Shown here one piece after another: positions 1-24,600 of a stretch of DNA of 64,000 nucleotides. How positions within the stretch are numbered: the stretch's first letter is position 1; every line of letters starts with the position of its first letter. Source of the stretch: Euprymna scolopes (Eukaryota); assembly GCA_053919585.1 (NCBI GenBank), contig CM132790.1, one strand, 5' to 3'. Under the pieces are notes generated by a model that was given only the letters and a program-made list of their open reading frames with translations, was not told the origin of the DNA and did not search any database. A program made the position numbers and the translations under genes.

Positions 1-3000
1 AAAAGGCCAGTCATTTATAACAGTCTGGACATCAGACAATGTAGTAGCTGGCTTGATTAATCTGTTTATACAAACATGACTTTATGATTTCAAACCCTTG
101 GTCCGAGGAACTCCTATAAATAAAAGGCCAGTCATTTATAACAGTCTGGACATCAGACAATGTAGTAGCTGGCTTGATTAATCTGTTTATACAACCATGA
201 CTTTATGATTTCCAACCCTTGGTCCGAGGAACTCCTATAAATAAAAGGCCAGTCATTTATAACAGTCTGGACATCAGACAATGTAGTAGCTGGCTTGATT
301 AATCTATTTATACAAACATGACTTTATGATTTCCAACCCTTGGTCCGAGGAACTCCTATAAATAAAAGGCCAGTCATTTATAACAGTCTGGACATCAGAC
401 AATGTAGTAGCTGGCTTGATTAATCTGTTTATACAAACATGACTTTATGATTTCCAACCCTTGGTCCGAGGAACTCCTATAAATAAAAGGCCAGTCATTT
501 ATAACAGTCTGGACATCAGACAATGTAGTAGCTGGCTTGATTAATCTGTTTATACAACCATGACTTTATGATTTCCAACCCTTGGTCCGAGGAACTCCTA
601 TAAATAAAAGGCCAGTCATTTATAACAGTCTGGACATCAGACAATGTAGTAGCTGGCTTGATTAATCTATTTATACAAACATGACTTTATGATTTCCAAC
701 CCTTGGTCCGAGGAACTCCTATAAATAAAAGGCCAGTCATTTATAACAGTCTGGACATCAGACAATGTAGTAGCTGGCTTGATTAATCTGTTTATACAAC
801 CATGACTTTATGATTTCCAACCCTTGGTCCGAGGAACTCCTATAAATAAAAGGCCAGTCATTTATAACAGTCTGGACATCAGACAATGTAGTAGCTGGCT
901 TGATTAATCTGTTTATACAAACATGACTTTATGATTTCCAACCCTTGGTCCGAGGAACTCCTATAAATAAAAGGCCAGTCATTTATAACAGTCTGGACAT
1001 CAGACAATGTAGTAGCTGGCTTGATTAATCTGTTTATACAACCATGACTTTATGATTTCCAACCCTTGGTCCGAGGAACTCCTATAAATAAAAGGCCAGT
1101 CATTTATAACAGTCTGGACATCAGACAATGTAGTAGCTGGCTTGATTAATCTATTTATACAAACATGACTTTATGATTTCCAACCCTTGGTCCGAGGAAC
1201 TCCTATAAATAAAAGGCCAGTCATTTATAACAGTCTGGACATCAGACAATGTAGTAGCTGGCTTGATTAATCTGTTTATACAACCATGACTTTATGATTT
1301 CCAACCCTTGGTCCGAGGAACTCCTATAAATAAAAGGCCAGTCATTTATAACAGTCTGGACATCAGACAATGTAGTAGCTGGCTTGATTAATCTGTTTAT
1401 ACAAACATGACTTTATGATTTCCAACCCTTGGTCCGAGGAACTCCTATAAATAAAAGGCCAGTCATTTATAACAGTCTGGACATCAGACAATGTAGTAGC
1501 TGGCTTGATTAATCTGTTTATACAAACATGACTTTATGATTTCCAACCCTTGGTCCGAGGAACTCCTATAAATAAAAGGCCAGTCATTTATAACAGTCTG
1601 GACATCAGACAATGTAGTAGCTGGCTTGATTAATCTGTTTATACAACCATGACTTTATGATTTCCAACCCTTGGTCCGAGGAACTCCTATAAATAAAAGG
1701 CCAGTCATTTATAACAGTCTGGACATCAGACAATGTAGTAGCTGGCTTGATTAATCTATTTATACAAACATGACTTTATGATTTCCAACCCTTGGTCCGA
1801 GGAACTCCTATAAATAAAAGGCCAGTCATTTATAACAGTCTGGACATCAGACAATGTAGTAGCTGGCTTGATTAATCTGTTTATACAAACATGACTTTAT
1901 GATTTCCAACCCTTGGTCCGAGGAACTCCTATAAATAAAAGGCCAGTCATTTATAACAGTCTGGACATCAGACAATGTAGTAGCTGGCTTGATTAATCTG
2001 TTTATACAACCATGACTTTATGATTTCCAACCCTTGGTCCGAGGAACTCCTATAAATAAAAGGCCAGTCATTTATAACAGTCTGGACATCAGACAATGTA
2101 GTAGCTGGCTTGATTAATCTGTTTATACAACCATGACTTTATGATTTCCAACCCTTGGTCCGAGGAACTCCTATAAATAAAAGGCCAGTCATTTATAACA
2201 GTCTGGACATCAGACAATGTAGTAGCTGGCTTCATTAATCTGTTTATACAACCATGACTTTATGATTTCCAACCCTTGGTCCGAGGAACTCCTATAAATA
2301 AAAGGCCAGTCATTTATAACAGTCTGGACATCAGACAATGTAGTAGCTGGCTTGATTAATCTGTTTATACAAACATGACTTTATGATTTCCAACCCTTGG
2401 TCCGAGGAACTCCTATAAATAAAAGGCCAGTCATTTATAACAGTCTGGACATCAGACAATGTAGTAGCTGGCTTGATTAATCTGTTTATACAACCATGAC
2501 TTTATGATTTCCAACCCTTGGTCCGAGGAACTCCTATAAATAAAAGGCCAGTCATTTATAACAGTCTGGACATCAGACAATGTAGTAGCTGGCTTGATTA
2601 ATCTGTTTATACAACCATGACTTTATGATTTCCAACCCTTGGTCCGAGGAACTCCTATAAATAAAAGGCCAGTCATTTATAACAGTCTGGACATCAGACA
2701 ATGTAGTAGCTGGCTTGATTAATCTGTTTATACAACCATGACTTTATGATTTCCAACCCTTGGTCCGAGGAACTCCTATAAATAAAAGGCCAGTCATTTA
2801 TAACAGTCTGGACATCAGACAATGTAGTAGCTGGCTTGATTAATCTGTTTATACAACCATGACTTTATGATTTCCAACCCTTGGTCCGAGGAACTCCTAT
2901 AAATAAAAGGCCAGTCATTTATAACAGTCTGGACATCAGACAATGTAGTAGCTGGCTTGATTAATCTGTTTATACAAACATGACTTTATGATTTCCAACC

Positions 3001-6000
3001 CTTGGTCCGAGGAACTCCTATAAATAAAAGGCCAGTCATTTATAACAGTCTGGACATCAGACAATGTAGTAGCTGGCTTGATTAATCTGTTTATACAACC
3101 ATGACTTTATGATTTCCAACCCTTGGTCCGAGGAACTCCTATAAATAAAAGGCCAGTCATTTATAACAGTCTGGACATCAGACAATGTAGTAGCTGGCTT
3201 GATTAATCTGTTTATACAAACATGACTTTATGATTTCCAACCCTTGGTCCGAGGAACTCCTATAAATAAAAGGCCAGTCATTTATAACAGTCTGGACATC
3301 AGACAATGTAGTAGCTGGCTTGATTAATCTGTTTATACAAACATGACTTTATGATTTCCAACCCTTGGTCCGAGGAACTCCTATAAATAAAAGGCCAGTC
3401 ATTTATAACAGTCTGGACATCAGACAATGTAGTAGCTGGCTTGATTAATCTGTTTATACAAACATGACTTTATGATTTCTAACCCTTTGTCCGAGGAACT
3501 CCTATAAATAAAAGGCCAGTCATTTATAACAGTCTGGACATCAGACAATGTAGTAGCTGGCTTGATTAATCTGTTTATACAAACATGACTTTATGATTTC
3601 CAACCCTTGGTCCGAGGAACTCCTATAAATAAAAGGCCAGTCATTTATAACAGTCTGGACATCAGACAATGTAGTAGCTGGCTTGATTAATCTGTTTATA
3701 CAAACATGACTTTATGATTTCCAACCCTTGGTCCGAGGAACTCCTATAAATAAAAGGCCAGTCATTTATAACAGTCTGGACATCAGACAATGTAGTAGCT
3801 GGCTTGATTAATCTGTTTATACAAACATGACTTTATGATTTCCAACCCTTGGTCCGAGGAACTCCTATAAATAAAAGGCCAGTCATTTATAACAGTCTGG
3901 ACATCAGACAATGTAGTAGCTGGCTTGATTAATCTGTTTATACAACCATGACTTTATGATTTCCAACCCTTGGTCCGAGGAACTCCTATAAATAAAAGGC
4001 CAGTCATTTATAACAGTCTGGACATCAGACAATGTAGTAGCTGGCTTGATTAATCTGTTTATACAACCATGACTTTATGATTTCCAACCCTTGGTCCGAG
4101 GAACTCCTATAAATAAAAGGCCAGTCATTTATAACAGTCTGGACATCAGACAATGTAGTAGCTGGCTTGATTAATCTGTTTATACAACCATGACTTTATG
4201 ATTTCCAACCCTTGGTCCTGAGGAACTCCTATAAATAAAAGGCCAGTCATTTATAACAGTCTGGACATCAGACAATGTAGTAGCTGGCTTGATTAATCTG
4301 TTTATACAAACATGACTTTATGATTTCCAACCCTTGGTCCGAGGAACTCCTATAAATAAAAGGCCAGTCATTTATAACAGTCTGGACATCAGACAATGTA
4401 GTAGCTGGCTTGATTAATCTGTTTATACAACCATGACTTTATGATTTCCAACCCTTGGTCCGAGGAACTCCTATAAATAAAAGGCCAGTCATTTATAACA
4501 GTCTGGACATCAGACAATGTAGTAGCTGGCTTGATTAATCTGTTTATACAACCATGACTTTATGATTTCCAACCCTTGGTCCGAGGAACTCCTATAAATA
4601 AAAGGCGAGTCATTTATAACAGTCTGGACATCAGACAATGTAGTAGCTGGCTTGATTAATCTGTTTATACAACCATGACTTTATGATTTCCAACCCTTGG
4701 TCCGAGGAACTCCTATAAATAAAAGGCCAGTCATTTATAACAGTCTGGACATCAGACAATGTAGTAGCTGGCTTGATTAATCTGTTTATACAACCATGAC
4801 TTTATGATTTCGAACCCTTGGTCCGAGGAACTCCTATAAATAAAAGGCCAGTCATTTATAACAGTCTGGACATCAGACAATGTAGTAGCTGGCTTGATTA
4901 ATCTGTTTATACAACCATGACTTTATGATTTCCAACCCTTGGTCCGAGGAACTCCTATAAATAAAAGGCCAGTCATTTATAACAGTCTGGACATCAGACA
5001 ATGTAGTAGCTGGCTTGATTAATCTGTTTATACAACCATGACTTTATGATTTCCAACCCTTGGTCCGAGGAACTCCTATAAATAAAAGGCCAGTCATTTA
5101 TAACAGTCTGGACATCAGACAATGTAGTAGCTGGCTTGATTAATCTGTTTATACAACCATGACTTTATGATTTCCAACCCTTGGTCCGAGGAACTCCTAT
5201 AAATAAAAGGCCAGTCATTTATAACAGTCTGGACATCAGACAATGTAGTAGCTGGCTTGATTAATCTGTTTATACAACCATGACTTTATGATTTCCAACC
5301 CTTGGTCTGAGGAACTCCTATAAATAAAAGGCCAGTCATTTATAACAGTCTGGACATCAGACAATGTAGTAGCTGGCTTGATTAATCTGTTTATACAAAC
5401 ATGACTTTATGATTTCCAACCCTTGGTCCGAGGAACTCCTATAAATAAAAGGCCAGTCATTTATAACAGTCTGGACATCAGACAATGTAGTAGCTGGCTT
5501 GATTAATCTGTTTATACAACCATGACTTTATGATTTCCAACCCTTGGTCCGAAGAACTCCTATAAATAAAAGGCCAGTCATTTATAACAGTCTGGACATC
5601 AGACAATGTAGTAGCTGGCTTGATTAATCTGTTTATACAACCATGACTTTATGATTTCCAACCCTTGGTCCGAGGAACTCCTATAAATAAAAGGCCAGTC
5701 ATTTATAACAGTCTGGACATCAGACAATGTAGTAGCTGGCTTGATTAATCTGTTTATACAACCATGACTTTATGATTTCCAACCCTTGGTCTGAGGAACT
5801 CCTATAAATAAAAGGCCAGTCATTTATAACAGTCTGGACATCAGACAATGTAGTAGCTGGCTTGATTAATCTGTTTATACAAACATGACTTTATGATTTC
5901 CAACCCTTGGTCCGAGGAACTCCTATAAATAAAAGGCCAGTCATTTATAACAGTCTGGACATCAGACAATGTAGTAGCTGGCTTGATTAATCTGTTTATA

Positions 6001-9000
6001 CAACCATGACTTTATGATTTCCAACCCTTGGTCCGAGGAACTCCTATAAATAAAAGGCCAGTCATTTATAACAGTCTGGACATCAGACAATGTAGTAGCT
6101 GGCTTGATTAATCTGTTTATACAACCATGACTTTATGATTTCCAACCCTTGGTCTGAGGAACTCCTATAAATAAAAGGCCAGTCATTTATAACAGTCTGG
6201 ACATCAGACAATGTAGTAGCTGGCTTGATTAATCTGTTTATACAACCATGACTTTATGATTTCCAACCCTTGGTCCGAGGAACTCCTATAAATAAAAGGC
6301 CAGTCATTTATAACAGTCTGGACATCAGACAATGTAGTAGCTGGCTTGATTAATCTGTTTATACAACCATGACTTTATGATTTCCAACCCTTGGTCTGAG
6401 GAACTCCTATAAATAAAAGGCCAGTCATTTATAACAGTCTGGACATCAGACAATGTAGTAGCTGGCTTGATTAATCTGTTTATACAAACATGACTTTATG
6501 ATTTCCAACCCTTGGTCCGAGGAACTCCTATAAATAAAAGGCCAGTCATTTATAACAGTCTGGACATCAGACAATGTAGTAGCTGGCTTGATTAATCTGT
6601 TTATACAACCATGACTTTATGATTTCGAACCCTTGGTCCGAGGAACTCCTATAAATAAAAGGCCAGTCATTTATAACAGTCTGGACATCAGACAATGTAG
6701 TAGCTGGCTTGATTAATCTGTTTATACAAACATGACTTTATGATTTCCAACCCTTGGTCCGAGGAACTCTTATAAATAAAAGGCCAGTCATTTATAACAG
6801 TCTGGACATCAGACAATGTAGTAGCTGGCTTGATTAATCTGTTTATACAACCATGACTTTATGATTTCCAACCCTTGGTCCGAGGAACTCCTATAAATAA
6901 AAGGCCAGTCATTTATAACAGTCTGGACATCAGACAATGGCTTGATTAATCTGTTTATACAAACATGACTTTATGATTTCCAACCCTTGGTCCGAGGAAC
7001 TCCTATAAATAAAAGGCCAGTCATTTATAACAGTCTGGACATCAGACAATGGCTTGATTAATCTGTTTATACAAACATGACTTTATGATTTCCAACCCTT
7101 GGTCCGAGGAACTCCTATAAATAAAAGGCCAGTCATTTATAACAGTCTGGACATCAGACAATGGCTTGATTAATCTGTTTATACAACCATGACTTTATGA
7201 TTTCCAACCCTTGGTCTGAGGAACTCCTATAAATAAAAGGCCAGTCATTTATAACAGTCTGGACATCAGACAATGTAGTAGCTGGCTTGATTAATCTGTT
7301 TATACAAACATGACTTTATGATTTCCAACCCTTGGTCCGAGGAACTCCTATAAATAAAAGGCCAGTCATTTATAACAGTCTGGACATCAGACAATGTAGT
7401 AGCTGGCTTGATTAATCTGTTTATACAACCATGACTTTATGATTTCGAACCCTTGGTCTGAGGAACTCCTATAAATAAAAGGCCAGTCATTTATAACAGT
7501 CTGGACATCAGACAATGTAGTAGCTGGCTTGATTAATCTGTTTATACAAACATGACTTTATGATTTCCAACCCTTGGTCCGAGGAACTCCTATAAATAAA
7601 AGGCCAGTCATTTATAACAGTCTGGACATCAGACAATGTAGTAGCTGGCTTGATTAATCTGTTTATACAACCATGACTTTATGATTTCCAACCCTTGGTC
7701 CGAGGAACTCCTATAAATAAAAGGCCAGTCATTTATAACAGTCTGGACATCAGACAATGGCTTGATTAATCTGTTTATACAAACATGACTTTATGATTTC
7801 CAACCCTTGGTCCGAGGAACTCCTATAAATAAAAGGCCAGTCATTTATAACAGTCTGGACATCAGACAATGGCTTGATTAATCTGTTTATACAAACATGA
7901 CTTTATGATTTCCAACCCTTGGTCCGAGGAACTCCTATAAATAAAAGGCCAGTCATTTATAACAGTCTGGACATCAGACAATGTAGTAGCTGGCTTGATT
8001 AATCTGTTTATACAAACATGACTTTATGATTTCCAACCCTTGGTCCGAGGAACTCCTATAAATAAAAGGCCAGTCATTTATAACAGTCTGGACATCAGAC
8101 AATGTAGTAGCTGGCTTGATTAATCTGTTTATACAAACATGACTTTATGATTTCCAACCCTTGGTCCGAGGAACTCCTATAAATAAAAGGCCAGTCATTT
8201 ATAACAGTCTGGACATCAGACAATGTAGTAGCTGGCTTGATTAATCTGTTTATACAAACATGACTTTATGATTTCCAACCCTTGGTCCGAGGAACTCCTA
8301 TAAATAAAAGGCCAGTCATTTATAACAGTCTGGACATCAGACAATGTAGTAGCTGGCTTGATTAATCTGTTTATACAACCATGACTTTATGATTTCCAAC
8401 CCTTGGTCCGAGGAACTCCTATAAATAAAAGGCCAGTCATTTATAACAGTCTGGACATCAGACAATGTAGTAGCTGGCTTGATTAATCTGTTTATACAAA
8501 CATGACTTCATGATTTCCAACCCTTGGTCCGAGGAACTCCTATAAATAAAAGGCCAGTCATTTATAACAGTCTGGACATCAGACAATGTAGTAGCTGGCT
8601 TGATTAATCTGTTTATACAACCATGACTTTATGATTTCCAACCCTTGGTCCGAGGAACTCCTATAAATAAAAGGCCAGTCATTTATAACAGTCTGGACAT
8701 CAGACAATGTAGTAGCTGGCTTGATTTATCTGTTTATACAACGATGACTTTATGATTTCCAACCCTTGGTCTGAGGAACTCCTATAAATAAAAGGCCAGT
8801 CATTTATAACAGTCTAGACATCAGACAATGTAGTAGCTGGCTTGATTAATCTGTTTATACAACCATGACTTTATGGTTCCCAACCCTTGGTCCGAGGAAC
8901 TCCTATAAATAAAAGGCCAGTCATTTATAACAGTCTGGACATCAGACAATGTAGTAGCTGGCTTGATTAATCTGTTTATACAACCATGACTTTATGATTT

Positions 9001-9960
9001 CCAACCCTTGGTCCGAGGAACTCCTATAAATAAAAGGCCAGTCATTTATAACAGTCTGGACATCAGACAATGTAGTAGCTGGCTTGATTAATCTGTTTAT
9101 ACAAACATGACTTTATGATTTCCAACCCTTGGTCCGAGGAACTCCTATAAATAAAAGGCCAGTCATTTATAACAGTCTGGACATCAGACAATGTAGTAGC
9201 TGGCTTGATTAATCTGTTTATACAACCATGACTTTATGATTTCCAACCCTTGGTCCGAGGAACTCCTATAAATAAAAGGCCAGTCATTTATAACAGTCTG
9301 GACATCAGACAATGTAGTAGCTGGCTTGATTAATCTGTTTATACAACCATGACTTTATGATTTCCAACCCTTGGTCCGAGGAACTCCTATAAATAAAAGG
9401 CCAGTCATTTATAACAGTCTTGACATCAGACAATGTATTAGCTGGCTTGATTAATCTGTTTATACAACCATGACTTTATGATTTCCAACCCTTGGTCCGA
9501 GGAACTCCTATAAATAAAAGGCCAGTCATTTATAACAGTCTTGACATCAGACAATGTATTAGCTGGCTTGATTAATCTGTTTATACAACCATGACTTTAT
9601 GATTTCCAACCCTTGGTCCGAGGAACTCCTATAAATAAAAGGCCAGTCATTTATAACAGTCTGGACATCAGACAATGTAGTAGCTGGCTTGATTAATCTG
9701 TTTATACAACCATGACTTTATGATTTCCAACCCTTGGTCCGAGGAACTCCTATAAATAAAAGGCCAGTCATTTATAACAGTCTTGACATCAGACAATGTA
9801 TTAGCTGGCTTGATTAATCTGTTTATACAACCATGACTTTATGATTTCCAACCCTTGGTCCGAGGAACTCCTATAAATAAAAGGCCAGTCATTTATAACA
9901 GTCTGGACATCAGACAATGTAGTAGCTGGCTTGATTAATCTGTTTATACAACCAGGACTT
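1..9960. repeat. 121-bp tandem satellite, ~82 monomers, runs off the left edge
   Basis: AAAAGGCCAGTC recurs at 1, 122, 243... Units are near-identical, with a recurring ACAAACATG/ACAACCATG dimorphism and five 112-bp units (9-bp deletion) at 6899, 7011, 7123, 7719 and 7831. Confidence 0.99.
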
Positions 9961-10152
9961 TGTAGTTCTAATGAGCCTCTCCCAAACACTTCCATACCCA
10001 GAAGAGTACAAGGGTATTTTAACATGTTCTATTTCACATGTCCCAAATCTTTCCTTGTATGCACTGGAGGTAAAAGCTTCATGTATCACACTGCACCCTG
10101 CAACAAATGACTTTGCATTGTCACTGTAGATGTGCGAGGGTATGCCGTATGT
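9840..10152 (-). pseudogene. Bel/Pao integrase core fragment, 3' of the LINE insertion; source of the satellite monomer
   Basis: Minus-strand translation YGIPSHIYSDNAKSF...YGSVWERLIRTTKSWLYKQI, then after a frameshift TTLSDVQTVINDWPFIYRSSSDQGLEII. This matches the Bel/Pao integrase pattern GxPxxIYSDNxxxF...GGxWERLxRxxK...TxLxExExxxNxRPL. Confidence 0.9.
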
Positions 10153-12990
10153 CTGATAGGTTAAGGGCACCGGTTTGACAATTTGGCTGCTGTATTCCGA
10201 CGGACAGTACAGAAGCCCTAACTCTTTGGTAGCACTGAGAACAACTGCTCCATCATCACTTGTATTATATCGGGATGATTGTAGTGCCATGTTGCGCATG
10301 GAAAGGGACCCTGCATCCATCTCCGGTGGGCTTTCCCAAGGCCACAATTCTGCAGATGAAGATGCGCTGATGGTCTAATTGTGTTGCATGTTTGATATTC
10401 TACACAATTCTACACAACTACTTTGTTCAGTACCTCTCACTCTAAAACTGACACTTTTAAATGAAATAAAATGACACTTCAATAAAAAATTATGATTAAA
10501 CCAAGTGCAAACTCAAACAAAACTAATTCGCTTCTCCCCTTGAGGCTTGCATATTGAATATCCACAGGTTTAGAACTAATTTGGATGCTGTTGAATCATT
10601 TCTCCTAACAAACTCCTCGGATATCTTAGTGCTAAATGAAACTAACCTATGCTCCTTCATCCCCTACAACCACTTTAACATGCCTATCTCCCACTTTGCC
10701 GTAAGGACTTAGACATATGCACGGACTTGAAGTGTATATTCGAAACACTCTTGACTAGAGAATCAAAACTAGAATCAGATGACCAGATCTTCATGTGCTT
10801 TAGACTTGTAACATAGCGTTAGCTACTTATATTTTCTCTACAGGTCTCCCTCGACCCAAGACTGCATCCTAATCGACCAAGTCTCTGACGGCATAGATAC
10901 AGCACTCTCCCTTGATATTAGCACACAAGTACATGTATTTGGTGACTTTACTGTCCACTACAGTAATTGGCTTGGTTTTTATACAGATGCAGCTGGTAGT
11001 ATGACATATAACTTCTCTATAACTCATTCCCCATCAGAGACAGTTACGTTTTCGACCTATCTCCCAGATCAACAAGATCAACAAGCCTCACTTCTTGATC
11101 TATTTCTGACCACAGTTCTCGAGGATTGTGTAAGAATGCCCATAGCCCACTCGGGAATGCTGATAACGTTGCGATAATGATAGAAATCACTTTAACTCTC
11201 GACCTAAAGCTGAAGCTTAAAACAACAAGATACTCTAAGAAAGCAGACTGAGCAGCCATCAGAGATTTCATCAGAGATGGCTCATGGGGAAGTATCTGTT
11301 CTCTTCCTGCAGAAAAAATGAGACCACCAAATGGTTCAAAGCGGCAATTGAAGCACATGTTCTCACAATGGAAGTTCTATAGCAAACCCACTCTCCCCAA
11401 TATTTTACTTCTACTTGCACAGCTGTCATTGCTCAAAGGCAACATGCATACTACAGATTTATCCGGCATAAGTCCAGTACAAACAGACAAAAGTTAATAG
11501 AAGCTGGAAGTAATTGCAAAGAAGGAAATCATGACAGGTAAGGGGGAATACACCAAAACCACCAGAAAATGCATTGAAATGCAGAAATTAAGAACTCGTG
11601 ATTTCTAGAAAATCTACAACAGTGTAGTGCATAATGGGCAATCTACAATTCCCCCACTATTCAACAATCATGAGATTGCTTGCATGGCAACTGAGAAGGC
11701 TAACATGTTTGCCAGTCAGTTTGTCTCAAACTCTACAGTGGACCCAGCAAACCACTCCCTCCCTGATTTTCCTTTGCGGAGAGAAACCACTTTTAGGCAA
11801 GCCCTTTCTATTGCAGATATCCTAACTGTAATCTCTGAACATATTTACCATACACTGGATAAAGCAGGAGAAGGTAGGGCAGTAGCCCTAGATATATCCA
11901 AAGCTTTTGACAGGGTATGGCATGAGGGTCTTCTCAGGAAAATCAGATCCTACGGTATTACTGGATGATAATTTAATTAAATCCTTCTTCAGTAAGAGAA
12001 GAATCCAGGTTGTCCTTGATGGACGTACGTCAGATCAATATGATATAAATGCAGATGTACCTCAAGGGTCGATCCTTGGACTTATTATTCCTGATATTCA
12101 TAATTGACTTCTCTGATAAAATAGTTTCTGAGATGAGGATATTTGCTGATGACACCACACTCCATAGTAGGTGCAAGGGGAAAACAAATGAACTAAGATA
12201 ATAGCAGAAACCCTAGAAGAAGACCTCCAATCTGTAGTAGAATGGAGACAAAAATGGATGGTGACATTGAATGCTACCAAGACCAAGCCTATTTCCTTCA
12301 ATAATTACAAGAAACCTTCTCTACCAATAATAACTATGGCTAATGATACATTACCTGAAAGTATTTCTTTCAAATTCCTCGGCTTAATGTTTAGAGGGAA
12401 CATGAATTTGAACAGATACATTGAAGAAGGAGACATTGCTGCGAAGAAGGTGGGCTCTCTCTACTGTGCTAGAAAGTTACTTACGCATGAAAGTATCCTG
12501 TACCTCTACCAGGCCACCATTCGCCCATGTATAGGGTAGTGTTGTCACATTTGGGCTGGTGCATCTGCTACTGGACTCTCACTCCTGGACAGGGTTCAAA
12601 AGAGTCGCCAACCCAATAGGTCCTGAACTAGGTTTTGGCCTCTGTCCCATTGATGAAATGTTGCATCCCTCTGCCTATTTTACAAGTATTTTTATGGCAT
12701 ATGCTCCGATGAACTACAAGTCCTTGTACCCCCTCGACATAAATACTCCCAATAAACCTGACAAGCAGCAAAATCCCACCTCTTCACAGTAGAAATCCCC
12801 AGATGACAGAAAGCCGCCTACTCTAATAGTTTCTTTTCCAGAACTGCTAAATTTTGGAATTCCTTTGGTGTAAGCAGACATCTTAATGCTCAGCTCCCTA
12901 CACAATATTCCTGCAATCATGGCCCAGATAGTAGCCCCCTACATCAAATTGGCACCCTTGTTTGGGGTGAAAATGCAATTTAAAAAAAAA
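10153..12990 (+). mobile_element. Decayed CR1/L2-group (Zenon-like) LINE, endonuclease + RT, inserted into the Pao integrase
   Basis: APE motifs (NIH.FRTNLDAVESFL...DILVLNETNL, VFGDF) ~10530-10950; RT motifs ALDISKAFDRVWH, VPQGSILG, FADD, CCHIWAG; poly(A) 12981-12990; ATGT duplicated at 10149-10152 and 12991-12994; internal deletion near 11790; many frameshifts. Confidence 0.88.
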
Positions 12991-15250
12991 ATGTGTTGGT
13001 AAATCATACGAATGCTGTTAGGAATGAATGGAACACTTTAGGGCTTCTGTTATTCCTTCTTGTTCCAGATTTTCAAAAACCCTTAAATATTCATCATGGA
13101 GTCGTTTTTTCTCCAAATCACAAACTACTCTATTTAAGACCTTAATGGCAACATGGTGGTTAGCTTGAACTCTTTTCAGTCTATTCTCATACCATGGAAA
13201 CGTGATCAAATAGTGTCCGTCTCTAAGAGAGATGTTATCCATAAACTCGTCCAACATAGAATCATCTTCGGAATAAAGGAAGTCCTAGTGACTCGAGGCT
13301 GAACATCCACTTCAAACCCCTGTCCACTTGGCTATCCTCAAAAACGTCTGAAAAAGGATCAACATAAGAAGGGCAGGGATTCATCAAACTATTGAAAGGA
13401 AACCTTCTAACAATTCAGTCATAGCTTTGGTTCTTGGAGAATTTAGTGAGAGGCTTCATTTGGTCATCGAACAGGAAATGTCTGGTATCCTCGAAGAGGA
13501 TTATACCAACTGGGGTTTCCCAAGCAGTTCTGTGCATGCGCTCCACTACCCTAATAGGATACATATGCTGCAAGAGATCCACCCTCATCAGGCTCCAAAG
13601 GTAAACAGATCCACTTGTAATATCAGTTGTCAGATCCAAGCCTAAGCGTCAGAGATTCTTCCAGATTAGAGGCAAAGCAAGAACCTAGCTAACTAAGATC
13701 TAGCTAACTGTCGATAAGAATTGGAACTTGAGGGACAGCACCCAGGAACAAATCAACCACGATCATTAAATATAAAACGGCGGTGCCTCTTTCTTACAAA
13801 AGAGACAATATCTACAGCCACATGTTCAAATGAGTCTTGGTCACAATGCATATGGTCTAAGGCTTTTTAGAAAAATATGACCTCTGACTACCGGAATCTA
13901 AAAGACAGGTCAGTGAAACCGACTAATTTCCCCTTCTAATGGTAGTTCTGATCATAGGCAATATGTTCTGGGCTGTTTCAGCATTAGTGCTCACGTTAAT
14001 GTTAATTCCAGACTTATCTGATTTTAGTTCCAGGCACAACACTGACAGATGTCCATGAGCATGGCAAAAATTGCCATTTGGACAAGCTCTGCTATGGTGA
14101 CTGGGATCTGAACAACTCTGACACAAACTCAGTTGTTTACATTGCTTGAGCCATTCCCTGTATGATGGATAGGCTTTACAGTTAACACTGGAATGCCCAT
14201 TCCTGGCACAAAAATTGCAGAAGTAGGGACTCTCCTCAAGATCAATATGAAATCCCTCTGTGGTCCCTCCTTGATCATTCCTATTCCATGAAGAATTTGT
14301 CCTAGGACGGAAACGAGAGATATTAGTCTCGTGCGCAGGCTCAGGTCTCGCTCAAAGGATGGCCTTTACACATCACTAGTATAATGAAGTATGAAATCCT
14401 GGCTAGGATAAGGCAAGTTTGATCCTCTAATCAGCTCAGCCCTGACTTCATATGGAATCTTTTCAAAGAAAATTTGAACCACCAAGGCACCACTGTCTGA
14501 ACCCTCCACTAGAAAATCATATCCATAATTGGAGTCTAGTTCCCCAAGCTCATAGTGCACCTGGGCCAGATATTCCTTCAAATATTCATAGTTTTTATCC
14601 ATCTTGGGCTGGCCTTGAATAATTTTCTCAAAACTCTCCTCTCGAATGGCATTCTTATCGCAGTATTCTGCCTTGAGAATATCAATAGCAATATTGTAAT
14701 TCCACTTGTTCTTAGAAAGAGTATAATTGAGGTGGAACGGTCATCCTGACACGTTTTTAAACATATTAGCCTTTCTTTATCGGTATTAAGTCCCGATGTG
14801 CAGAACTTGAATTTTTCTAAAAAAATCCCTCAAGGCAAACTTGTTGTCACGATCGAGGCCATCAAACGTAAGCTAAGAGATCTTGGGTTTTGCCAGCTCA
14901 TATCCCACCTGACTAGCTTTTGGCAAAGTTAGTTGAGGGGTAGCTGTTAAAAGAGTGGTAAATTCTGCTGAGGGAAGAGAGTTCCTTATGCCTCTTTGTG
15001 ATAAATATATGCCAGTCTGATAGGTGAAGATGTCATCAAACAGAGCACTCACTTCATCAAGACGAGCTACTCTGATTATATATCCTTATCTAATTGTTTC
15101 AACTCCTCCAACCATAAATCGATTCCCGACTATGTAGTTCTAGAACTTCTGCTTCAAGGGGTTTCAATGCCTCTAGTCTTTCCAGTGGATGATCACCTCG
15201 ATTGTCACTTAGAGATGCAAACTGGGAAGACTGTATTCCTGTAAAAGAAT
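12991..15250 (-). mobile_element. Bel/Pao LTR retrotransposon remnant: gag with zinc knuckles, protease, pre-RT region; RT/RNase H deleted
   Basis: Knuckles CNFCARNGHSSVNC, CQSCSDPSHHSRAC, CHAHGHLSVLC (14035-14225); protease LLDSGSQRSYF (~13872-13910); DGHYLITFPW...EQEGITE (13050-13257) joined almost directly to integrase FLTAFV*FTNT (12991-13025). 5' boundary approximate; LTRs not identified. Confidence 0.88.
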
Positions 15251-15764
15251 TTAATCTGGGTAGATATGAAAAAAAAATTTACTGCAAAGTGATCGAAATA
15301 ATATGAGGAATTCCCACAAAATAAAATGTAGAAGTAAATGACGTTGCAACAAGTTACCTTGTTGCAGTCTAGGTCTATCTCCAAGTTCTGGTAGACTGAT
15401 ATGCGTTAAACCTGTCAAAAGAGTTGAGCAACACCTAAGCCACTTTTAAAGAAAAAAGTGAGGAGGTATGTAATGAAATCCCGTAAAAACGTCATTCATG
15501 TCAACAAACTTAATATAAGGCATACTAAAGAAGGCCACTGTTTCCTCTTATCATTCCAGCTACCATGGTAGGCAGCTGGAATTTTCTACAATAATTGCAA
15601 AAATATTTCATGTGATTTTTAATAACAGTTTCCATGAAATTTAAATGTAATAATAGAATATTTCCCTTGTATGCATGACATGTAAATATCAGTGTAAGTG
15701 GCTTTGGTGTTGTGGGAGGTCATGTTTATGATATTTTTGACGTATGATCAAACAAAGTAATGCA

Positions 15765-16100: not shown

Positions 16101-16603
16101 GCATTTTGATGGCAATGGTCCCGTTGTCATAACTTGGATTAGTAGAGAACATGAGTTGTACAGTAGGGCATCATTGATTTTGCTCATTGAACATTGTGTC
16201 ACTTTCAGGCATGATAGAAGGTTCCTATCGCTCTTGGGATTTGCACACAACTGACAAACTAGTAGAGAGTCTTCACCAAAAAACCCCTAAAAAACTGCTT
16301 TTCATCAAATGGAAATGAAGTCATGTCTTTTCTATGGCAACAATTTTATTGTTCCATCCTTTACTTCATAATCAGCATCTTTTCTAATTTTGCTATGTAA
16401 ATCAGATGAATGCTGTTTCATTGGCTTTAACATTGGATAACATTGCAATGATAAAATTAGTCTCCTATCGCTATTTGCTTTATCATAAACTTATTGTAAC
16501 AACATCAGTTAAATTAAAAATCTGGGCTCCCACTTTTAGTAACTGTAAATCCAATGAATAGTATGTATAGAATTAGATGTCAGCAAACATTGTATGTGCA
16601 TCA

Positions 16604-18028
16604 TGAGTTGCTGGAATCTGTGTTAAATAGAGAAGTAGTCAATCACCTCAGTAAAAATAACCTTCTTTGTGATATGCAATATGGTTTCCATTCTGCTAGA
16701 TCTACAGCAGATGTGCTAATGGTTATATCTCATATGATTAGTGACTTTATTGATGGTGGCTTCTTTTCTAGGGCAATTGCTCTTGACACATCAAAGGCCT
16801 TTGATAGGGTATGGCATAAAGGTTTACTTCATAAAATCTCCAACTATGGTATAGCTAGAAATGTCTTCTCAATTATTAAATCATTTCTCTCTGATAGAAT
16901 CATCAGAGTAGTAGTTGATGGGCAAAAATCAGAAGCTCACAGTATTAATGCTGGAGTCCCTCAGGGGTCCATCCTGAGACCAACTCTCTTCCTGATCTAC
17001 ATTAATGATCTTCCAAATCACATCCTAAGATCATTCATAGACATTTATGCTGACGGCACTACCATCTATGGCAACACATCAAAGGCCATAATGACCAAGT
17101 TCTCTCTGATTCTCTCTCCTTTAATCTTGATCATGTAGTACAATGGGGAAAGAGGTGGCTGGTTACTTTTAATGCATCTAAAACCAAGATTCTATTTTTA
17201 CATCATCAACGCTCTGATCCTCATCTGGCATCAATTGAAATGAGTGGCTCTCGTCTTGGGGAGGCTCCATGTTTTAACAAGCTCCTGGACTTGACCTTTA
17301 CTCCTGATCTGAAATGGAAAACTTACATCAAATCTATTGCCAAGGTTGCTGGAAAAATGGTGGGATCGTTCTATCACTCCAGTAGATATCTCACTGCTGA
17401 TGCAATTCTCTACCTGTATAAAAGCTAGGTACGTCAAAGAATGGAGTACTGTTGCCACATCTGGCCAGGAGCTGCTTGAAAGGACTTATCTTGCCTTGAC
17501 AGAGTACAAAATAGACTTCGTAGCCTAGTGGAGGATGCGCCTCTCTCTCCCCTGCAACCTCTTTCCCACAGAAGAGATGTTGTGAGCCTGTCTCTGCTTT
17601 ATTGTTATTTTTGTGGTAAGTGCTTGTCTGAGCTCCAATCTATGGTCCTTCCTTACCAAACTTTCATGAAAAACACTCATCTAGCTGAAACCACTAAAAC
17701 CACTATCAATTATTTCCCCACTCTTTATCTGTGCCTAAACCTAAACCTAAACGTAGATTCCATGAACAAAGCTTCTTTCTTAGAAGTGCACACCTGTGGA
17801 ACTCTCTTCCGTTTGCCTGCTTTCCAGTTGACTACAATTTGGTCATTTTGAAGTCCAATGTAAACCAATTCTTGTTGAATTGTCCCCTTACATATTCCAA
17901 TTTACCAAATTTCCACTAACGATTACTACAACATTTTCCCATTGACTACTGTACACTCATTAACTCTTATCCTCGAGTGACTTCTGGGACTTTTTGAATG
18001 GTGACTCCTTTGTAAAAAAAAAAAAAAA
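16604..18028 (+). mobile_element. 5'-truncated, decayed CR1/Zenon-like LINE (same family as 48288 and 62790 copies)
   Basis: QYGF, ALDTSKAFDRVWH, GVPQGSIL, YADG (mutated YADD), MEYCCHIW; frameshifts; 3' poly(A) 18014-18028; near-collinear with 63222-64000. Confidence 0.93.
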
Positions 18029-18660: not shown

Positions 18661-21600
18661 TTTCTGTTTAGCAGAAGTCAGGCCATTTCTGTTTAGCGTA
18701 AGTGAGACCATTTCTGTTAAGTGAAAGTCAGGCCATTTCTGTTTAAGGGAAGTAAGGCAATTTCTGTTCAGTAGAAGTTAGACAATTTCTGTTTAGCGGA
18801 AGTTAGACAATTTCTGTTTAGTGGAAGTCAGGTCATTTCTGTTTAGTGGAAGTTAGACCATTTTTGTTTAGTGGAAGACAGGCCATTTCTGTTTAGTGGA
18901 AGTAAGGCCATTTCTGTTTAGTGGAAGTCAGGCAAATTTCAGTTTAGTGGAAGTACGACCATTTCTGTTTAGCAGAAGTAAGACCATTTCTGTTTAGCAG
19001 AAGTAAGACCATTACTGTTTAGCAGAAGTTAGATCATTTCTGTTTAGCAGAAGTTAGACAATTTCTGTTTAGCGGAAGTTAGACCATTTCTGTTTAGTGG
19101 AAGTCAAGCTTTTCTGTTTAGTGGAATTCAGATCATTTCTGTTTAGTGGAAGTTAGACCATTTCTGTTCAGTAGAAATTAGATTATTTCTGTTTAGCAGA
19201 AGTCAGGCCATTTCTGTTTAGCGTAAGTGAGACCATTTCTGTTAAGTGAAAGTCAGGCCATTTCTGTTTAAGGGAAGTAAGGCAATTTCTGTTCAGCAGA
19301 AGTTAGACTATTTCTGTTTAGCAGAAGTTAGACAATTTCTGTTTAGTGGAAGTCAGGTCATTTCTGTTTAGTGGAAGTTAGACCATTTCTGTTTAGTGGA
19401 AGTCAGGCCATTTCTGTTTAGTGGAAGTCAGGCCATTTCTGTTTAGTGGAAGTTAGGCCATTTCTGTTTAGTGGAAGTCAGGAAAATTTCAGTTTAGTGG
19501 AAGTACGACCATTTCTGTTTAGCAGAAGTAAGACCATTTCTGTTTAGCAGAAGTAAGACCATTACTGTTTAGCAGAAGTTAGATCATTTCTGTTTAGCAG
19601 AAGTTAGACAATTTCTGTTTAGCAGAAGTTAGACCATTTCTGTTTAGTGGAAGTCAAGCCATTTCTGTTTAGTGGAATTCAGATAATTTCTGTTTAGTGG
19701 AAGTTAGACCATTTCTGTTCAGTAGAAATTAGACCATTTCTGTTTAGTGGAAGTAAGGTCATTTTTGCATAGTGGAAGTTATACCATTTCTATTTAGTGG
19801 AAGTAAGACCATTTCTGTTTAGTGGAAGTCAGGCTATTTCTGTTTAGTGGAAGTCAGGCCATTTCTGTTTAGTGGAAGTTAGACCATTTCTGTTTAGCAG
19901 AAGTTAGACCATTTCTGTTTAGTGGAAGTCAGGTCATTTCTGTTTAGTGACAGTTAGATCATATCTGTTTAGCAGAAGTTAGACATAAGAAGTAAGTTAG
20001 AAGTAGAAAACATTTTTGCGTAATGGAAGTTATACCATTTCTATTTGGTGGAAGTTATACCATTTCTTTTTAGTGGAAGTCAGGCTATTTCTGCTTAGCG
20101 GAAGTTACACCATTTTTCTGTTTAGCCAAAGTTAGACAATTTCTGTTTAGTGGAAGTTAGACCATTTCTATTTAGTGGAAGTCAGGCCATTTCTATTTAG
20201 TGCAAGTAAGACTATTTCTGTTTAGAGGAAGTAAGACCATTTCTGTTTAGAGGAGGCTAGGCCATTTTTGTTTACTGGAAGCCAGGCCATGTTTGCTTAG
20301 TAAAAGTTAGACTATTTCTGTTTAGCGGCAGTGAGACCATTTCTGCTTAGTAGAAGTCAGGCCATTTCTATATAGTGGAAGTTAGACCATTTCTGTTTAG
20401 TGGAAGTTAGACCATTTCTGTTTAGTGGAAGTTAGACCATTTCTGTGTAGCGGAAGTAAGACAATTTCTTTTTAGCGGAAGTTAGGCCATTTCTATTAAG
20501 TCGAAGTTAGACCATTTCTGTTTAGCGGAAGTTATACCATTTCTGTTCAGTGGAAGTTAGACCATTTCTGTTTAGCGGAAGTTAGACCATTTCTGTTTAG
20601 CAGAAGTGAGACCATTTCTGTTTAGCCGAAGTGAGACCATTTCTGTTTAGCGGAAGTTGACCATTTCTGTTTAGCGGAAGTAAGACCATTTCTGTTTAGT
20701 GGAAGTAAGGCTATTTCTGTTTAGAGGAAGCTAGGCCATTTTTTTTAGTGAAAGTCAGGCCATTTCTGTTAATGGAAGTCAGGTTATTTCTGTTTAGCGG
20801 AAGTTAGACAAATTCTGTTTAGCACAAGTGAGGCCATTTCTTTTTAGTGAAAGTAAGGCCATTTTTGTTAAGTGGCAGTTAGACCATTACTGTTTAGTTG
20901 AAGTGAGGCCATTTCTGTGTAGTGGAAGTCAGGCCATGTCTATTTAGTGGAAGTTGGACCATTTCTGTTTAGCGGAATTAAGACCATTACTCTTTACTAG
21001 AAGTTAGACCAATTCTGTTTCGCAAAAGATAGACAATTCCTGTTAGGGAAGTTAGACGATTTCTGTTTAGTTGAAGTAAGGCCATCTTTGTTTAGTGGAA
21101 GTTAGAACATTTCTGTTTAGTGAAAGTAAGGCCATTTCTGTTTAGCGGAAGTTAGACCATGTCTGTTTAGCAGAAGTTAGACAACTTCTGTTTAGTGGAA
21201 TAAGACCATTCTATTTAGTGGAAGTCAGGCCGTTTCTGTTTAGTAGAAGTCAGGTAAGTTCTGTTTAGTGGAAGTAAGACCATTTCTGTTAAGTGGTAGC
21301 CAGGCCATGTTTGTTTAGTAGAAGTTATACCATTTCTGTTTGGCGGAAGTTAGACCATTTCTGTTTAGCGGAAGTAAGACGATTTCTGTTTAGCAGAAGT
21401 TAGGCCATTTCTATTAAGTGGAAGTTATACCATTTTTATTTAGCGTGAGTTATACCATTTCTGTTCAGTGGAAGTTAGACATTTTATGTTTAGTGGAAGT
21501 TCGACCATTTCTGTTTAGCGGAAGTTCGACCATTTCTGTTTAGCGGAAGTAAGACCATTTCTGTTTAGCGGAAGCTAGACCATTTCTTTTTTGTGGAAAC

Positions 21601-24600
21601 TAGACCATTTCTTTTTTGTGGAAGTTAGACCATTTCTGTTTAGTGGGCGTCAGCATTTCTGTTTAGTGAAAGTAAGGCTATTTCTGTTCAGTGAAAGTCA
21701 GGTTTCTGTTTGGATGATGTTAGGCCATTTCTATTTAGTGGAAGCCAGGCCATGTTTGTTTAGTAGAAGTAAGACAATCTCTGTTTAGCAGGAGACGGCC
21801 CATTTCTGTTTAGTGGAAGTCGGGTCATTTATGTTTAGAGGAAGTTAGACCATTTCTGTTTAGCAGAAGTTAGACCATCTCTGTTTAGCGGAAGTGAGAC
21901 TATTTAGTCGAAGTCCAGTTATTTCTGTTTAGTTGAACCAGCACATTTCTGTTGAGTTGATATCAGGCCATTTCTGTTTTGTGGAAGTTAGACCATTTCT
22001 GTTTAGCGGAAGCCAGACCATGTCTGTTTAGCAGAGACTTAGACCATTTCTGTTTAGTGTAAGTAAGGTCATTTTTGTTTAGCAGAAGTAAGACCATTTC
22101 TGTTTAGTGAAAGTAAGGCCATTTCTCTTTGGTGGACGCCAGGCCATTTTTGTTTATTGGAAGTTAGACCATTTCTATTAGAGTGGAAATCAGGTCATTT
22201 CTGTTTACTGGAAGTAAGGCCATTTCTCTTTGGTGGAAGCCAGGCCATTTTTGTTTATTGGAAGTTAGACCTTTTCTATTTAGTGGAAATCAGGTCATTT
22301 CTATTTACTGAAAGTTAGACCATTTCTGCTTAGTGGAAGCCAGGCCAGTTTTGTTCAGTGGAAGTTAGACCATTTCTGTTCAGTGCCAGTCAGGAAATTT
22401 CTGTTTAGTTTGTAAGTTAGACCATTTCTGTTTAATGGAAGTCAGGCAATTTCTGTTTAGTGGAAATTAGACCATTTCTGTGCAGTGTGAAGTTAGACCA
22501 TTTCTGTGCAGTGTGAAGTTAGACCATTTCTGTTTAGCGGAAGTTACACCATTTCTGCTTAGTGGAAGTAAGGCAATTACTGTTTAGTGGAAGTTACACC
22601 ACTTCGGTTCAGTGGAAGTCAGGACCATTTATGTTTAGTGGAACTTAGACCATTTCTGCTTAGTGGAAGTTAGACCATTTCTGTTTAGCGGAAGTTAGAA
22701 CATTCCTGTTTAGTGAAAGTTTAGCCATTTATGTGTAGCGGAAGTTAGACCATTTCCGTTTTGCTAGAGTGTAACTATTTCTGTTTAGCAGAAGTTAGAC
22801 CATTTCTCTTTAGTTGAAGTCACGCCATTTCTGTTGAATGGAGCCACACCATTTTTGTTTTGAGGAACAGGCCATTTCTGTTTTGTGGAAGTTAGACCAT
22901 TCCTGTTTAGTGGAAGTCAGGTCATTTCTGTATAGTTGAAATTAGATCGTCTGTGTAATGGAAGTTTGATCATGTCGGTTTAGCGGAAGTTACACCTTTC
23001 TGTTTCGCAGAAGGTAGACCATTTCTGTTTAGCGGAAGTGAGAGCATTTCTGTTTAGCGGAAGTTAGATCATTTCTGTTTAGGAGAAGTTAGACTATTTC
23101 TGTTTAGTGGAATGTAGACCATTGCTTTTTAGCAGAAGTTAGACCATTTCGGTTCAGGAGAAAGTTAGATCATTTCTGTTTAGTAGACGTTAGACAATTT
23201 CTGTTTAGTGGAATGTAGACCACTGCTTTTTAGCGGAAGTTAGGCAATTTCTGTTTAGTGGAAGTTTGACCATTTCTGTTTATCGGAAGTAAGACCATTT
23301 CTGTTTAGCGGAAGTCAGACCACTTCTGTATAGTGGAAGTTACACCATTTCTGTTTAGCGTAAGTCAGGTCACTTCTGTTTAGCGGTAGTGAGACACTTT
23401 CTGTTTAGTGGAAGTCAGGCCATTTCTCTTTGGTGGAAGCCAGGCCATTTTTGTTTATTGGAAGTTAGACCATTTCTATTTAGTCAAAGTCCGGTCATTT
23501 CTGTTGAATGGAAGTAAGGCAAATTCTGTTTAGTGGAACTCAGGCTATTTCTGTTTTGCGGAAGTTAGACAATTTCTGTTTAGCGGAAGCCAGACCATTT
23601 CTGTTTAGCAGAAGTTAGACCATTTCTGTCTAGTGTAAGTCAGGCCATTTCTGTTTAGTGGAAGCCAGGCCATGTTTGTTTACTAGAAGTTAGACCATTT
23701 CTTTTTAGTAGAAGTCAGGCCATCTCTGGTTAGCGGAAGCTAGACCATTTCAAATCGCATATTTCTGTTTAGTGGAGCCAGGCCATTTCTGTTGAGTGAA
23801 AGTCAGGACATTTCTGTTGAGTGGAACTCAGGCCATTTCTATTTTGTGGAAGTTAGACCATTTCTGTTTATCGGAAGCAAGACCGTTTCTGTTGAGTGTA
23901 AGTCAGGTGATTTCTGTTTAGCAGAAGTTAGACAATTTCTGTTTAGTGGAAGTCAGGTCATTTCTGTTTGGTGGAAGCCAGGCCATTTTTGTTTATTGGA
24001 AGTAAGACCATTTCTATTTAGTAGAAGTCAGGTCATTTCTGTTTACTGGAAGTTAGACCATTTCTGTTTAGCGGAAGTCAGACGATGTCTGTTTGTGTAA
24101 GTCAGGCCATTTCTGTTTAGCGGAATTTAGACCATTTCTGTTAAGTGGCTGTCAGGCCATTTCTGTTTAGTGGAAGCCAGGCCATTTCTGTTTAGTGGAA
24201 GCCAGGCCATTTTTGTTCAGTGGAAGTAAGCTAACTTCTGTTTAGTAGAAGTTAGACCATGTCTGTATAGCTGAAGTTAGACTATTTCTGTTTAGTGGAA
24301 GGTAGACCATTGCTGTTTAGCGGAAGTTAGACAATTGTTGTTTAGTGGAAGTTAGACCATTTCTGTTTAGTGTAAGTCAGGTCATTTCCGTTTATTTTAA
24401 GTTTGACCATTTCTATTTAGTGGAAGTCAGGCCATTTTTCTTTGGTGGAAGCCAGGCCATTTTTGTTTATTGGAAGTTTGACCATTTCTATTTCGTGGAA
24501 ATCAGGTCATGTCTGTTTACTGAATGTCAGGCCATTTTTCTTTGGTGGAAGCCAGGCCATTTTTGTTTATTGGGAGTTAGACCATTTCTATTTAGCAGAA

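What the first reader, a model, noticed from the sequence alone, without database searches (positions are those of the whole stretch)
1..10152. A >=10-kb satellite born from 121 bp of a Bel/Pao integrase gene, still attached to its parent
Seen: on the minus strand the integrase reads WERLIRTT-KSWLYKQINQA/TTLSDVQTVINDWPFIYRSSSDQGLEII and then loops back to KSWLYKQ ~82 times. The entry point (ACAAAGTCCTGG, 9953-9964) and the monomer junction (ATAAAGTCATGG) share AAAGTC, a plausible microhomology. The monomer already carries a frameshift, so the element was dead before amplification. Known: TE-derived satellites usually come from LTR/UTR or Helitron repeats, less often from enzyme-coding DNA. Inference: a microhomology-primed duplication or circle was amplified in situ, with source and junction preserved.
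Basis: partly seen in the sequence, partly recalled or inferred. Interest (0 to 1): 0.75.

Follow-up and report, generated by a model that had tools for sequence, protein, structure and literature searches.

The report
Tandem array inside dead retrotransposon integrase
A 121-bp piece of the integrase gene of one old, broken Bel/Pao retrotransposon copy has been multiplied about 88 times on the spot into a 10.6-kb array found nowhere else in this 5.9-Gb animal genome; it is an unusually complete example of an already known way that tandem repeats arise.

Summary
TRF finds a 121-bp array at window 1-9961 (98% matches). It runs 639 bp further left of the window, giving 10,600 bp and 88 monomers.

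The array sits inside the integrase frame on the minus strand:
- Upstream, window 9962-10152 reads ...YGIPSHIYSDNAKSF...GSVWERLIRTT.
- Downstream, left of the window, the frame resumes as TPNHFL..., followed by DUF5641, a PHD finger and a 3' LTR.

The host is a single insertion of 18.1 kb with both LTRs and a 4-bp TSD. A non-LTR element has replaced its RT-to-integrase N-terminal part. Family copies carry Peptidase_A17, Integrase_H2C2 and DUF5641, so the family is Bel/Pao.

All 87 head-to-tail junctions in the assembly lie at this locus, and 39 of 39 other copies hold the segment once.

All monomers share a 20-bp frameshifting deletion and about 11% divergence from relatives. They differ from each other by only 1.1%, against 20% between the LTRs. 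Amplification was therefore late, in an already dead copy.

Rare variants cluster locally, which fits stepwise unequal exchange.

No reads could be examined. This is a new member of a known kind, of moderate interest.

The parts
1..9960 (-). In-window part (monomers 0 to about 82) of the 121-bp tandem array. The whole array is C8:170,747,362-170,757,961 (10,600 bp, 88 monomers) and continues 639 bp left of the window (L008:9362-10000).
   Evidence: TRF. Monomer-by-monomer listing. Mean pairwise substitution difference 1.08%, 25 distinct monomer sequences, the two commonest present 34 and 18 times. No open stretch longer than 56 codons on either strand.
9961..10152 (-). Integrase catalytic-core remnant directly upstream of the array in the sense direction: ...YGIPSHIYSDNAKSF...GSVWERLIRTT. 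It contains the second D and the E of the DDE triad. The boundary with the array is ambiguous by 1-2 bases (AA).
   Evidence: Translation. BLASTP 81% identity over 78 residues, E 8e-43, to the family integrase ORF. DNA homology to family copies ends at 10152.
10153..12992 (+). Copy of a very abundant non-LTR retrotransposon with a poly(A) run at 12982-12991. It replaces about 2.15 kb of the host element (family positions 2621-4769: RT, RNase H, integrase N-terminus). Bases 12993-13031 are filler of unknown origin.
   Evidence: RVT_1 fragment below Pfam's cut-off. Own-genome search gives 46,443 first-look candidates, with matches spanning query 9-2842. Sequence. Gap in the element map.
13032..15289 (-). 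Gag / zinc-knuckle / upstream pol part of the same Bel/Pao copy (family positions about 325-2620), degenerate with many stops.
   Evidence: blastn 78% identity over 2,679 columns to the C13 family copy, together with the 5' LTR. ORF fragments.
15290..15590 (-). 5' LTR of the host element (TGTAG...GATCA).
   Evidence: Aligned with the 3' LTR (L008:8430-8203 plus 7583-7500): p = 0.20, JC 0.24.
15591..15594 (-). 4-bp target-site duplication TTAT. Its partner is at L008:7499-7496, just past the 3' LTR.
   Evidence: Two other family copies also have 4-bp TSDs, ACAC and CAGA.

Best explanation
One old Bel/Pao LTR-retrotransposon copy inserted here, about 594 kb from the telomere of a 171-Mb chromosome, and decayed. 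It lost RT through the integrase N-terminus to a non-LTR insertion. It also acquired a 20-bp frameshifting deletion in the stretch just after the integrase catalytic glutamate.

Much later, a 121-bp segment of that dead gene was duplicated head-to-tail. In intact relatives the segment is 47 codons, from the K after WERLIRTT to LEII before TPNHFL. The break points lie in a short microhomology: AA today, CATAA in the family state.

Once two copies existed, out-of-register exchange or replication slippage between copies grew the array stepwise, in blocks of one to a few monomers. The result is 88 copies (10.6 kb).

The array codes for nothing. It is a private, single-locus by-product of DNA repair and replication in a region rich in tandem repeats.

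Shown: anatomy, parentage, uniqueness, relative timing.
Inferred: the microhomology-mediated first step and the unequal-exchange mode of growth.
For: - Both flanks continue the integrase frame. DUF5641 and PHD lie downstream in the same copy.
- The host is a single insertion: two LTRs plus a 4-bp TSD, as in other family copies.
- The family is Bel/Pao: Peptidase_A17 at 96 bits, Integrase_H2C2, DUF5641.
- The junction 33-mer (up to 2 mismatches) occurs 87 times in 5.9 Gb, all in this array.
- All 39 scored copies of this and the related family, and the 7 loci, hold the segment once.
- All monomers share the 20-bp deletion.
- Monomers are 82-92% identical to family copies, like the flanks. Monomer pairwise difference is 1.1%, against 20% between the LTRs.
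- The two edge monomers differ from the bulk by only one substitution and one 6-bp deletion, so the whole array is young.
- Rare variants cluster: the A39/A56 variant at monomers 1, 3, 4 (P about 0.002); the 9-bp deletion at 17, 18, 23-25 (P < 0.001); T19 at 68, 73, 77, 80, 83 (P = 0.03). Short type patterns such as BADAB recur.
- CATAA is the majority family state, seen in 6 of 9 copies at the segment start and in 6 of 9 at its end.
Against: - The copy number, and the array itself, rest on the assembly alone.
- In this copy the upstream motif now reads TACAA, not CATAA, so only 2 nt of exact microhomology are demonstrable.
- Low monomer divergence dates the last homogenisation, not strictly the first duplication.
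- The common G/T variant at monomer position 9 is not spatially clustered.
- Variant clustering does not exclude an initial rolling-circle burst followed by exchange.
Confidence: 0.8

Rival explanations
1. Rolling-circle origin. A 121-bp (or multimer) extrachromosomal circle excised from this copy was replicated by rolling circle. The concatemer then recombined back into the parent by homology, which also leaves both parental flanks in place.
For: This route gives the same end product as observed. The array is very homogeneous: 52 of 88 monomers belong to two sequence types. The junction sits in a short repeat that could mediate excision.
Against: Rare variants and multi-monomer patterns are locally clustered, as expected from stepwise block duplications rather than one burst. 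A 121-bp circle is very small and stiff. No other locus has the junction, so no dispersal by circles is visible. A burst followed by later exchange cannot be excluded.
Confidence: 0.1
2. Assembly artefact. The array is real but its length is wrong, or a short duplication was inflated by the assembler.
For: No read-level check was possible. Tandem arrays are a classic place for assembly error.
Against: The array holds 25 distinct monomer sequences in a non-periodic order, including 112-, 115- and 122-bp variants at specific places. An assembler loop would not invent these. At 10.6 kb the array is within the span of single long reads. Both flanks are unique and collinear with the host element. 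No alternative contig carries the junction.
Confidence: 0.07
3. Pre-insertion origin. The duplication arose by template switching during reverse transcription, or was a feature of a subfamily, and the copy inserted already carrying an array.
For: Tandem repeats in plant Ogre 3' UTRs are thought to arise during element replication (PMC7004042).
Against: None of the 39 scored copies, nor the 7 loci, has more than one unit. All monomers share this copy's private 20-bp deletion and its roughly 11% divergence. The edge monomers are as young as the core, while the LTRs differ by 20%.
Confidence: 0.03

Closest known systems
Tandem repeats / satDNA derived from internal segments of transposable elements, as reviewed in PMC12628747. 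That review lists LTR, gag or pol segments of LTR retrotransposons among known sources.
   Same: The monomer is a sub-segment of a TE. It arose by tandemisation of a decayed copy, and short direct repeats or microhomologies are invoked for the first step.
   Different: Here the array is at one locus only. The complete pedigree is preserved: both parental flanks, both LTRs, the TSD, and single-copy relatives. Most published cases are inferred from consensus similarity.
Chenopodium CficCl-61-40 satDNA, generated from a roughly 40-bp fragment of the tnp2 transposase domain of the CACTA-like element Jozin (PMC7320549)
   Same: Enzyme-coding DNA of a TE serves as the start monomer of an array that is still joined to the parental coding sequence. 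Deletion derivatives are involved.
   Different: That is a plant DNA transposon, and the repeat is the most abundant satellite of the genome, arising repeatedly at many loci. Here the source is an animal LTR retrotransposon integrase, with one locus and 88 copies.
Ogre (Ty3/gypsy) 3'-UTR tandem repeats that expanded into satellites in Lathyrus sativus (PMC7004042)
   Same: Arrays are embedded in LTR retrotransposons between recognisable element parts, and short arrays are candidate seeds of satellites.
   Different: Ogre repeats lie in the non-coding 3' UTR, are carried by many element copies, and probably arise during replication. Here the array lies in pol coding DNA of a single dead copy and arose after insertion.
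LCA-ApaI repeat of the Arctic lamprey, with homology to the integrase-coding region of Gypsy-26_PM (PMC5381345)
   Same: A repetitive sequence with homology to an LTR-retrotransposon integrase.
   Different: It has a 702-bp unit, is spread over nearly all chromosomes, and has no documented parent junction. It comes from a Gypsy element, not Bel/Pao.

Membership tests
Bel/Pao LTR retrotransposon (host element) | Pao-type pol signature (Pfam Peptidase_A17, PF05380) | tested here: met
   96.4 bits (cut-off 22.3) in the C13 family copy. 93.5 bits in the related family, L035. In the window's own copy this part is deleted, so membership rests on 78-85% DNA homology to those copies over the remaining parts.
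Bel/Pao LTR retrotransposon (host element) | Integrase with H2C2 zinc domain and DDE core, followed by DUF5641 | tested here: met
   Family copy: Integrase_H2C2 at 37.5 bits, rve/rva_4 weak and below Pfam's cut-offs, DUF5641 at 49.4 bits. Host copy: the core remnant is 81% identical to the family ORF, and DUF5641 scores 23.1 bits, exactly at the cut-off. The window fragment alone gives no Pfam hit.
Bel/Pao LTR retrotransposon (host element) | Two LTRs (TG...CA) flanked by a short target-site duplication | tested here: met
   5' LTR at window 15590-15290. 3' LTR at L008:8430-8203 plus 7583-7500. TSD TTAT on both sides. Family copies have 4-bp TSDs.
Satellite DNA in the strict sense | Long head-to-tail array of homogeneous monomers | tested here: met
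   88 monomers, 10.6 kb, 98.9% mean pairwise identity.
Satellite DNA in the strict sense | High genomic abundance, usually several loci or chromosomes | tested here: not met
   The junction 33-mer (up to 2 mismatches) is found 87 times in the assembly, all within this array. 10.6 kb is about 0.0002% of 5.9 Gb.
Satellite DNA in the strict sense | Heterochromatic or centromeric packaging | not testable with these tools
   Only position is known: 594 kb from a (TTAGGG)n chromosome end.
TE-derived tandem repeat born in situ | Monomer homologous to a contiguous TE segment, parental sequence continuing on both sides, other copies single-copy | tested here: met

The most novel reading that the evidence does not exclude
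The locus is a satellite seed caught close to its birth. Its whole pedigree is readable: the dated host insertion, the decay, the founding junction and the block-wise growth. It also lies in a subtelomeric stretch where unrelated sequences have independently been turned into arrays, so that about 47% of the 64-kb window is tandem repeats. If the region has a local amplification propensity, for example break-induced replication with template switching near the chromosome end, this copy would be a natural marker for measuring array birth and growth rates across individuals and sister species.
Probability: 0.15. Interest if true: 0.55.

Novelty: new member of a known kind. Interest (0 to 1): 0.35.

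Why it matters
Most claims that a satellite comes from a transposon rest on similarity between consensus sequences. Here every step can be read at one locus:
- the parent copy with both LTRs and its target-site duplication;
- the pre-existing frameshift;
- the exact founding junction and its microhomology;
- single-copy relatives as controls;
- variant patterns that record how the array grew.

That makes it a useful teaching and calibration case for models of tandem-repeat birth, and a possible copy-number marker. It does not reveal a new mechanism or a function. Pol-derived tandem repeats are already listed among known origins (PMC12628747).

Tried and rejected
- **Pfam on the window's own integrase fragment and a monomer ORF.** No hit. 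Identity had to be established through family copies.
- **Coding or structured-RNA role for the array.** Rejected: no open stretch above 56 codons, no Rfam family, and a DNA fold z-score of -0.94.
- **Family-wide array.** Rejected. A 121-bp-period repeat in L054 is an unrelated CAG-rich low-complexity stretch.
Rejected as identity by descent.
- **Strict higher-order repeat.** Only a weak lag-2 signal: autocorrelation 0.30 for the G/T site, and divergence 0.89% at lag 2 against 1.09% at lag 1.
- **Earlier scan notes by words.** Nothing found. The two notes near this place concern other parts of the window.
- **Collapsed or mended element.** I built no collapsed, consensus or mended version of the retroelement. 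All comparisons used native pieces taken by reference.
Full report
**1. The observation**

Tandem Repeats Finder reports a 121-bp unit, 82.7 copies, 98% matches and no indels at window 1-9961. The window is G000:C8:170,748,001-170,812,000 of a 5.9-Gb, 925-contig animal assembly.

I fetched the 30 kb to the left. The array continues for 639 bp and starts at L008:9362. The whole array is 10,600 bp (C8:170,747,362-170,757,961).

Cut in register on the minus strand, it holds 88 monomers: 81 of 121 bp, five of 112 bp, one of 122 bp, and a terminal one of 115 bp. There are no N in the array or its flanks.

The entry motif is one base off the stated coordinates.

**2. The array lies inside the gene, not beside it**

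Upstream in the sense direction, window 10152-9962 reads ...YGIPSHIYSDNAKSF...GSVWERLIRTT and runs straight into the first monomer, KSWLYKQ....

Downstream, the last monomer ends ...DQGLEII. The unique flank then continues in the same frame as TPNHFLHPVIN...KRIWYQEYL (L008:9440-9189). It is followed by an ORF with DUF5641 (23.1 bits, exactly at the Pfam cut-off) and a PHD finger (31.7 bits).

So a 121-bp internal segment was multiplied in place, and both parental joints are preserved.

**3. The parent element**

A DNA search of the same genome with a dimer found dispersed copies, each matching about one unit.

Two copies were extended.
- The C13 copy is a 6.4-kb element with 327-bp LTRs that are 94% alike.
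- The C9 copy has LTRs that are 88% alike.

Family ORFs carry:
- Peptidase_A17 ('Pao retrotransposon peptidase', 96 bits against a cut-off of 22.3);
- Integrase_H2C2;
- a weak rve core, below Pfam's cut-off;
- DUF5641;
- PHD fingers.

This places the family in Bel/Pao. The window's own integrase fragment gives no Pfam hit. It is, however, 81% identical over 78 residues to the family integrase (E 8e-43).

Mapping the C13 element onto the locus gives the following layout on the minus strand.

| Part | Position |
|---|---|
| 5' LTR | window 15590-15290 |
| gag and upstream pol | down to window 13032 |
| Family positions 2621-4769 (RT, RNase H, integrase N-terminus) | absent |
| Integrase core | window 10152-9962 |
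| Array | window 9961-1, continuing to L008:9362 |
| Integrase C-terminus, DUF5641, PHD | L008:9361 to about 8596 |
| 3' LTR, with a roughly 620-bp insert | L008:8430-8203 and 7583-7500 |

The missing 2.15 kb is replaced by window 10153-12992. This is a copy of a very abundant non-LTR retrotransposon on the plus strand, ending in a poly(A) run.

The LTRs begin TGTAG and end GATCA and are flanked by TTAT on both sides. Two other copies also have 4-bp duplications, ACAC and CAGA.

The host is therefore one insertion event, now 18.1 kb long. Everything inside it happened afterwards.

**4. Private to this copy**

A 33-nt pattern across the head-to-tail junction, allowing 2 mismatches, occurs 87 times in the whole assembly. 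All 87 are inside this array, and the reversed control gives none.

A second own-genome search with 801 bp of an intact relative scored 39 copies. Ten were at 84-100% identity, and at least 29 belonged to a related family at about 69%. Each aligns collinearly with no extra length.

TRF and BLAST on 30 of these loci show one unit each. The segment measures 135-152 bp from start motif to end motif in nine close copies.

**5. Order of events**

Family copies have 141 bp (47 codons) between the K after WERLIRT(I/T) and LEII. Every monomer lacks the same 20 bp there, which shifts the frame.

The 112-bp and 115-bp variants carry further nested deletions of 9 and 6 bp at the same spot, next to a CTACTA repeat.

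| Comparison | Value |
|---|---|
| Monomers vs family copies (ungapped identity) | 82-92% |
| Flanks vs family copies (ungapped identity) | 82-92% |
| Monomers vs each other (mean difference) | 1.08% |
| The two LTRs of this copy | 20% (JC 0.24) |

The two edge monomers are the ones least exposed to homogenisation. The first differs from the bulk by one substitution. The last differs by the 6-bp deletion only.

The array as a whole is therefore young. Its depth is roughly 5% of the time since insertion, if rates are equal. It was made from a copy that was already diverged and frameshifted. The caveat is that concerted evolution can erase older history.

**6. How it grew**

Rare variants are clustered.
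- A two-site variant is at monomers 1, 3, 4 (P about 0.002).
- The 9-bp deletion is at monomers 17, 18, 23, 24, 25 (P < 0.001).
- A T variant is at monomers 68, 73, 77, 80, 83 (P = 0.03).

Written as sequence types, the array shows recurring short blocks, such as ...DABBADABADABD.BD..., and repeated AC pairs.

There is only a weak dimer signal. This is the signature of repeated out-of-register exchange or slippage moving blocks of one to five monomers, rather than a single burst. An initial rolling-circle burst followed by exchange cannot be excluded.

**7. The founding junction**

The informative comparison is the parental sequence at the start of the segment against that at its end. In this copy these read ...CTACAA|AGTC... 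and ...ATCATAA|CCCC..., so AA is shared.

In the majority state of family copies they read ACCATAAAGT and ATCATAACCC, each seen in 6 of 9 copies. That is a 5-nt CATAA on both sides. The internal junction reads ATCATAAAGTC, which is exactly what a CATAA-mediated join predicts.

Whether this copy still had CATAA upstream when the first duplication occurred cannot be known.

**8. What it is not**

- It has no coding capacity: at most 56 open codons.
- It matches no Rfam family.
- It shows no unusual single-strand fold (z = -0.94).
- Its composition is ordinary for the region: GC 37.4% against 36.4%.
- It is not centromeric.

Contig C8 ends in (TTAGGG)n, and the array lies 594 kb from that end.

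**9. Comparison with what is known**

A 2025 review lists segments of the LTR, gag or pol of LTR retrotransposons among known sources of satellite DNA. It also describes microhomology-based first steps (PMC12628747).

The closest documented parallel for enzyme-coding DNA still attached to its array is the Chenopodium satellite seeded by a tnp2 transposase fragment (PMC7320549).

Ogre 3'-UTR repeats are the best-studied LTR-element case, but they are non-coding and family-wide (PMC7004042). A lamprey repeat resembles a Gypsy integrase but has no documented junction (PMC5381345).

I found no report of a Bel/Pao integrase-derived array in the searched library. Absence from that library is weak evidence.

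**10. Limits**

The reality of the assembled copy number, transcription, small RNAs and circles are therefore all untested.

One Atlas lead points to molluscs (score 0.84, a lead only).

No collapsed, consensus or repaired version of the retroelement was built. Comparisons used native stretches by reference.

**11. Verdict**

It is a clean new example of a known process, with moderate interest.

Noticed in passing
L035:1017-3719 (-); L001:1680-2545; host copy L008:8596-9135 (-): This Bel/Pao lineage ends its pol with DUF5641 followed by one or two PHD fingers (56 bits in L035, 40 bits in L001, 31.7 bits in the host copy). PHD fingers read histone H3 tails, so this may be an integration-targeting module analogous to the chromodomain of chromoviruses. 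A literature search found no description. An Atlas cluster named 'Integrase zinc binding/PHD-finger/Integrase core', commonest in Mollusca, is a lead only (score 0.84).
   Followed up: partly
window 18661-36276: A 17.6-kb array of a 25-bp unit (about 706 copies, 72-75% matches) with strong strand asymmetry (GC skew about +0.25, AT skew about -0.23). It lies 3 kb beyond the host element's 5' LTR. Together with the 38-, 53-, 26- and 27-bp arrays further right, about 47% of the window is tandem repeats.
   Followed up: no
L055 (C8:171,347,435-171,352,434): The chromosome end has a terminal (TTAGGG)n block of at least 860 bp. Before it come an 89-bp satellite (31 copies, also read as a 358-bp higher-order period) and a second, internal (TTAGGG)n block of about 700 bp.
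   Followed up: partly
window 10153-12992 (+) and 16554-17138 (+): Two non-LTR retrotransposon fragments. The first belongs to a very abundant family (46,443 first-look candidates in the genome). It is associated with the loss of 2.15 kb of the Bel/Pao copy and with 39 bp of filler at 12993-13031. The second has an RVT_1 match of 75 bits.
   Followed up: partly
L008:7584-8202: A roughly 620-bp insertion inside the 3' LTR of the host element, containing a (GA)n / (TC)n microsatellite. Its origin was not determined.
   Followed up: no
window 39759-39834: A short, degenerate interstitial telomere-like repeat (TAACCC, about 12 units, 68% matches).
   Followed up: no
L035-L054 (e.g. C6:110,529,501; C41:45,708,513): A related Bel/Pao family, 69% identical in DNA to the host family. 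It has at least 29 copies giving nearly identical scores, which suggests much more recent activity than the host family. It was used here only as an in-frame reference for the 47-codon segment.
   Followed up: partly
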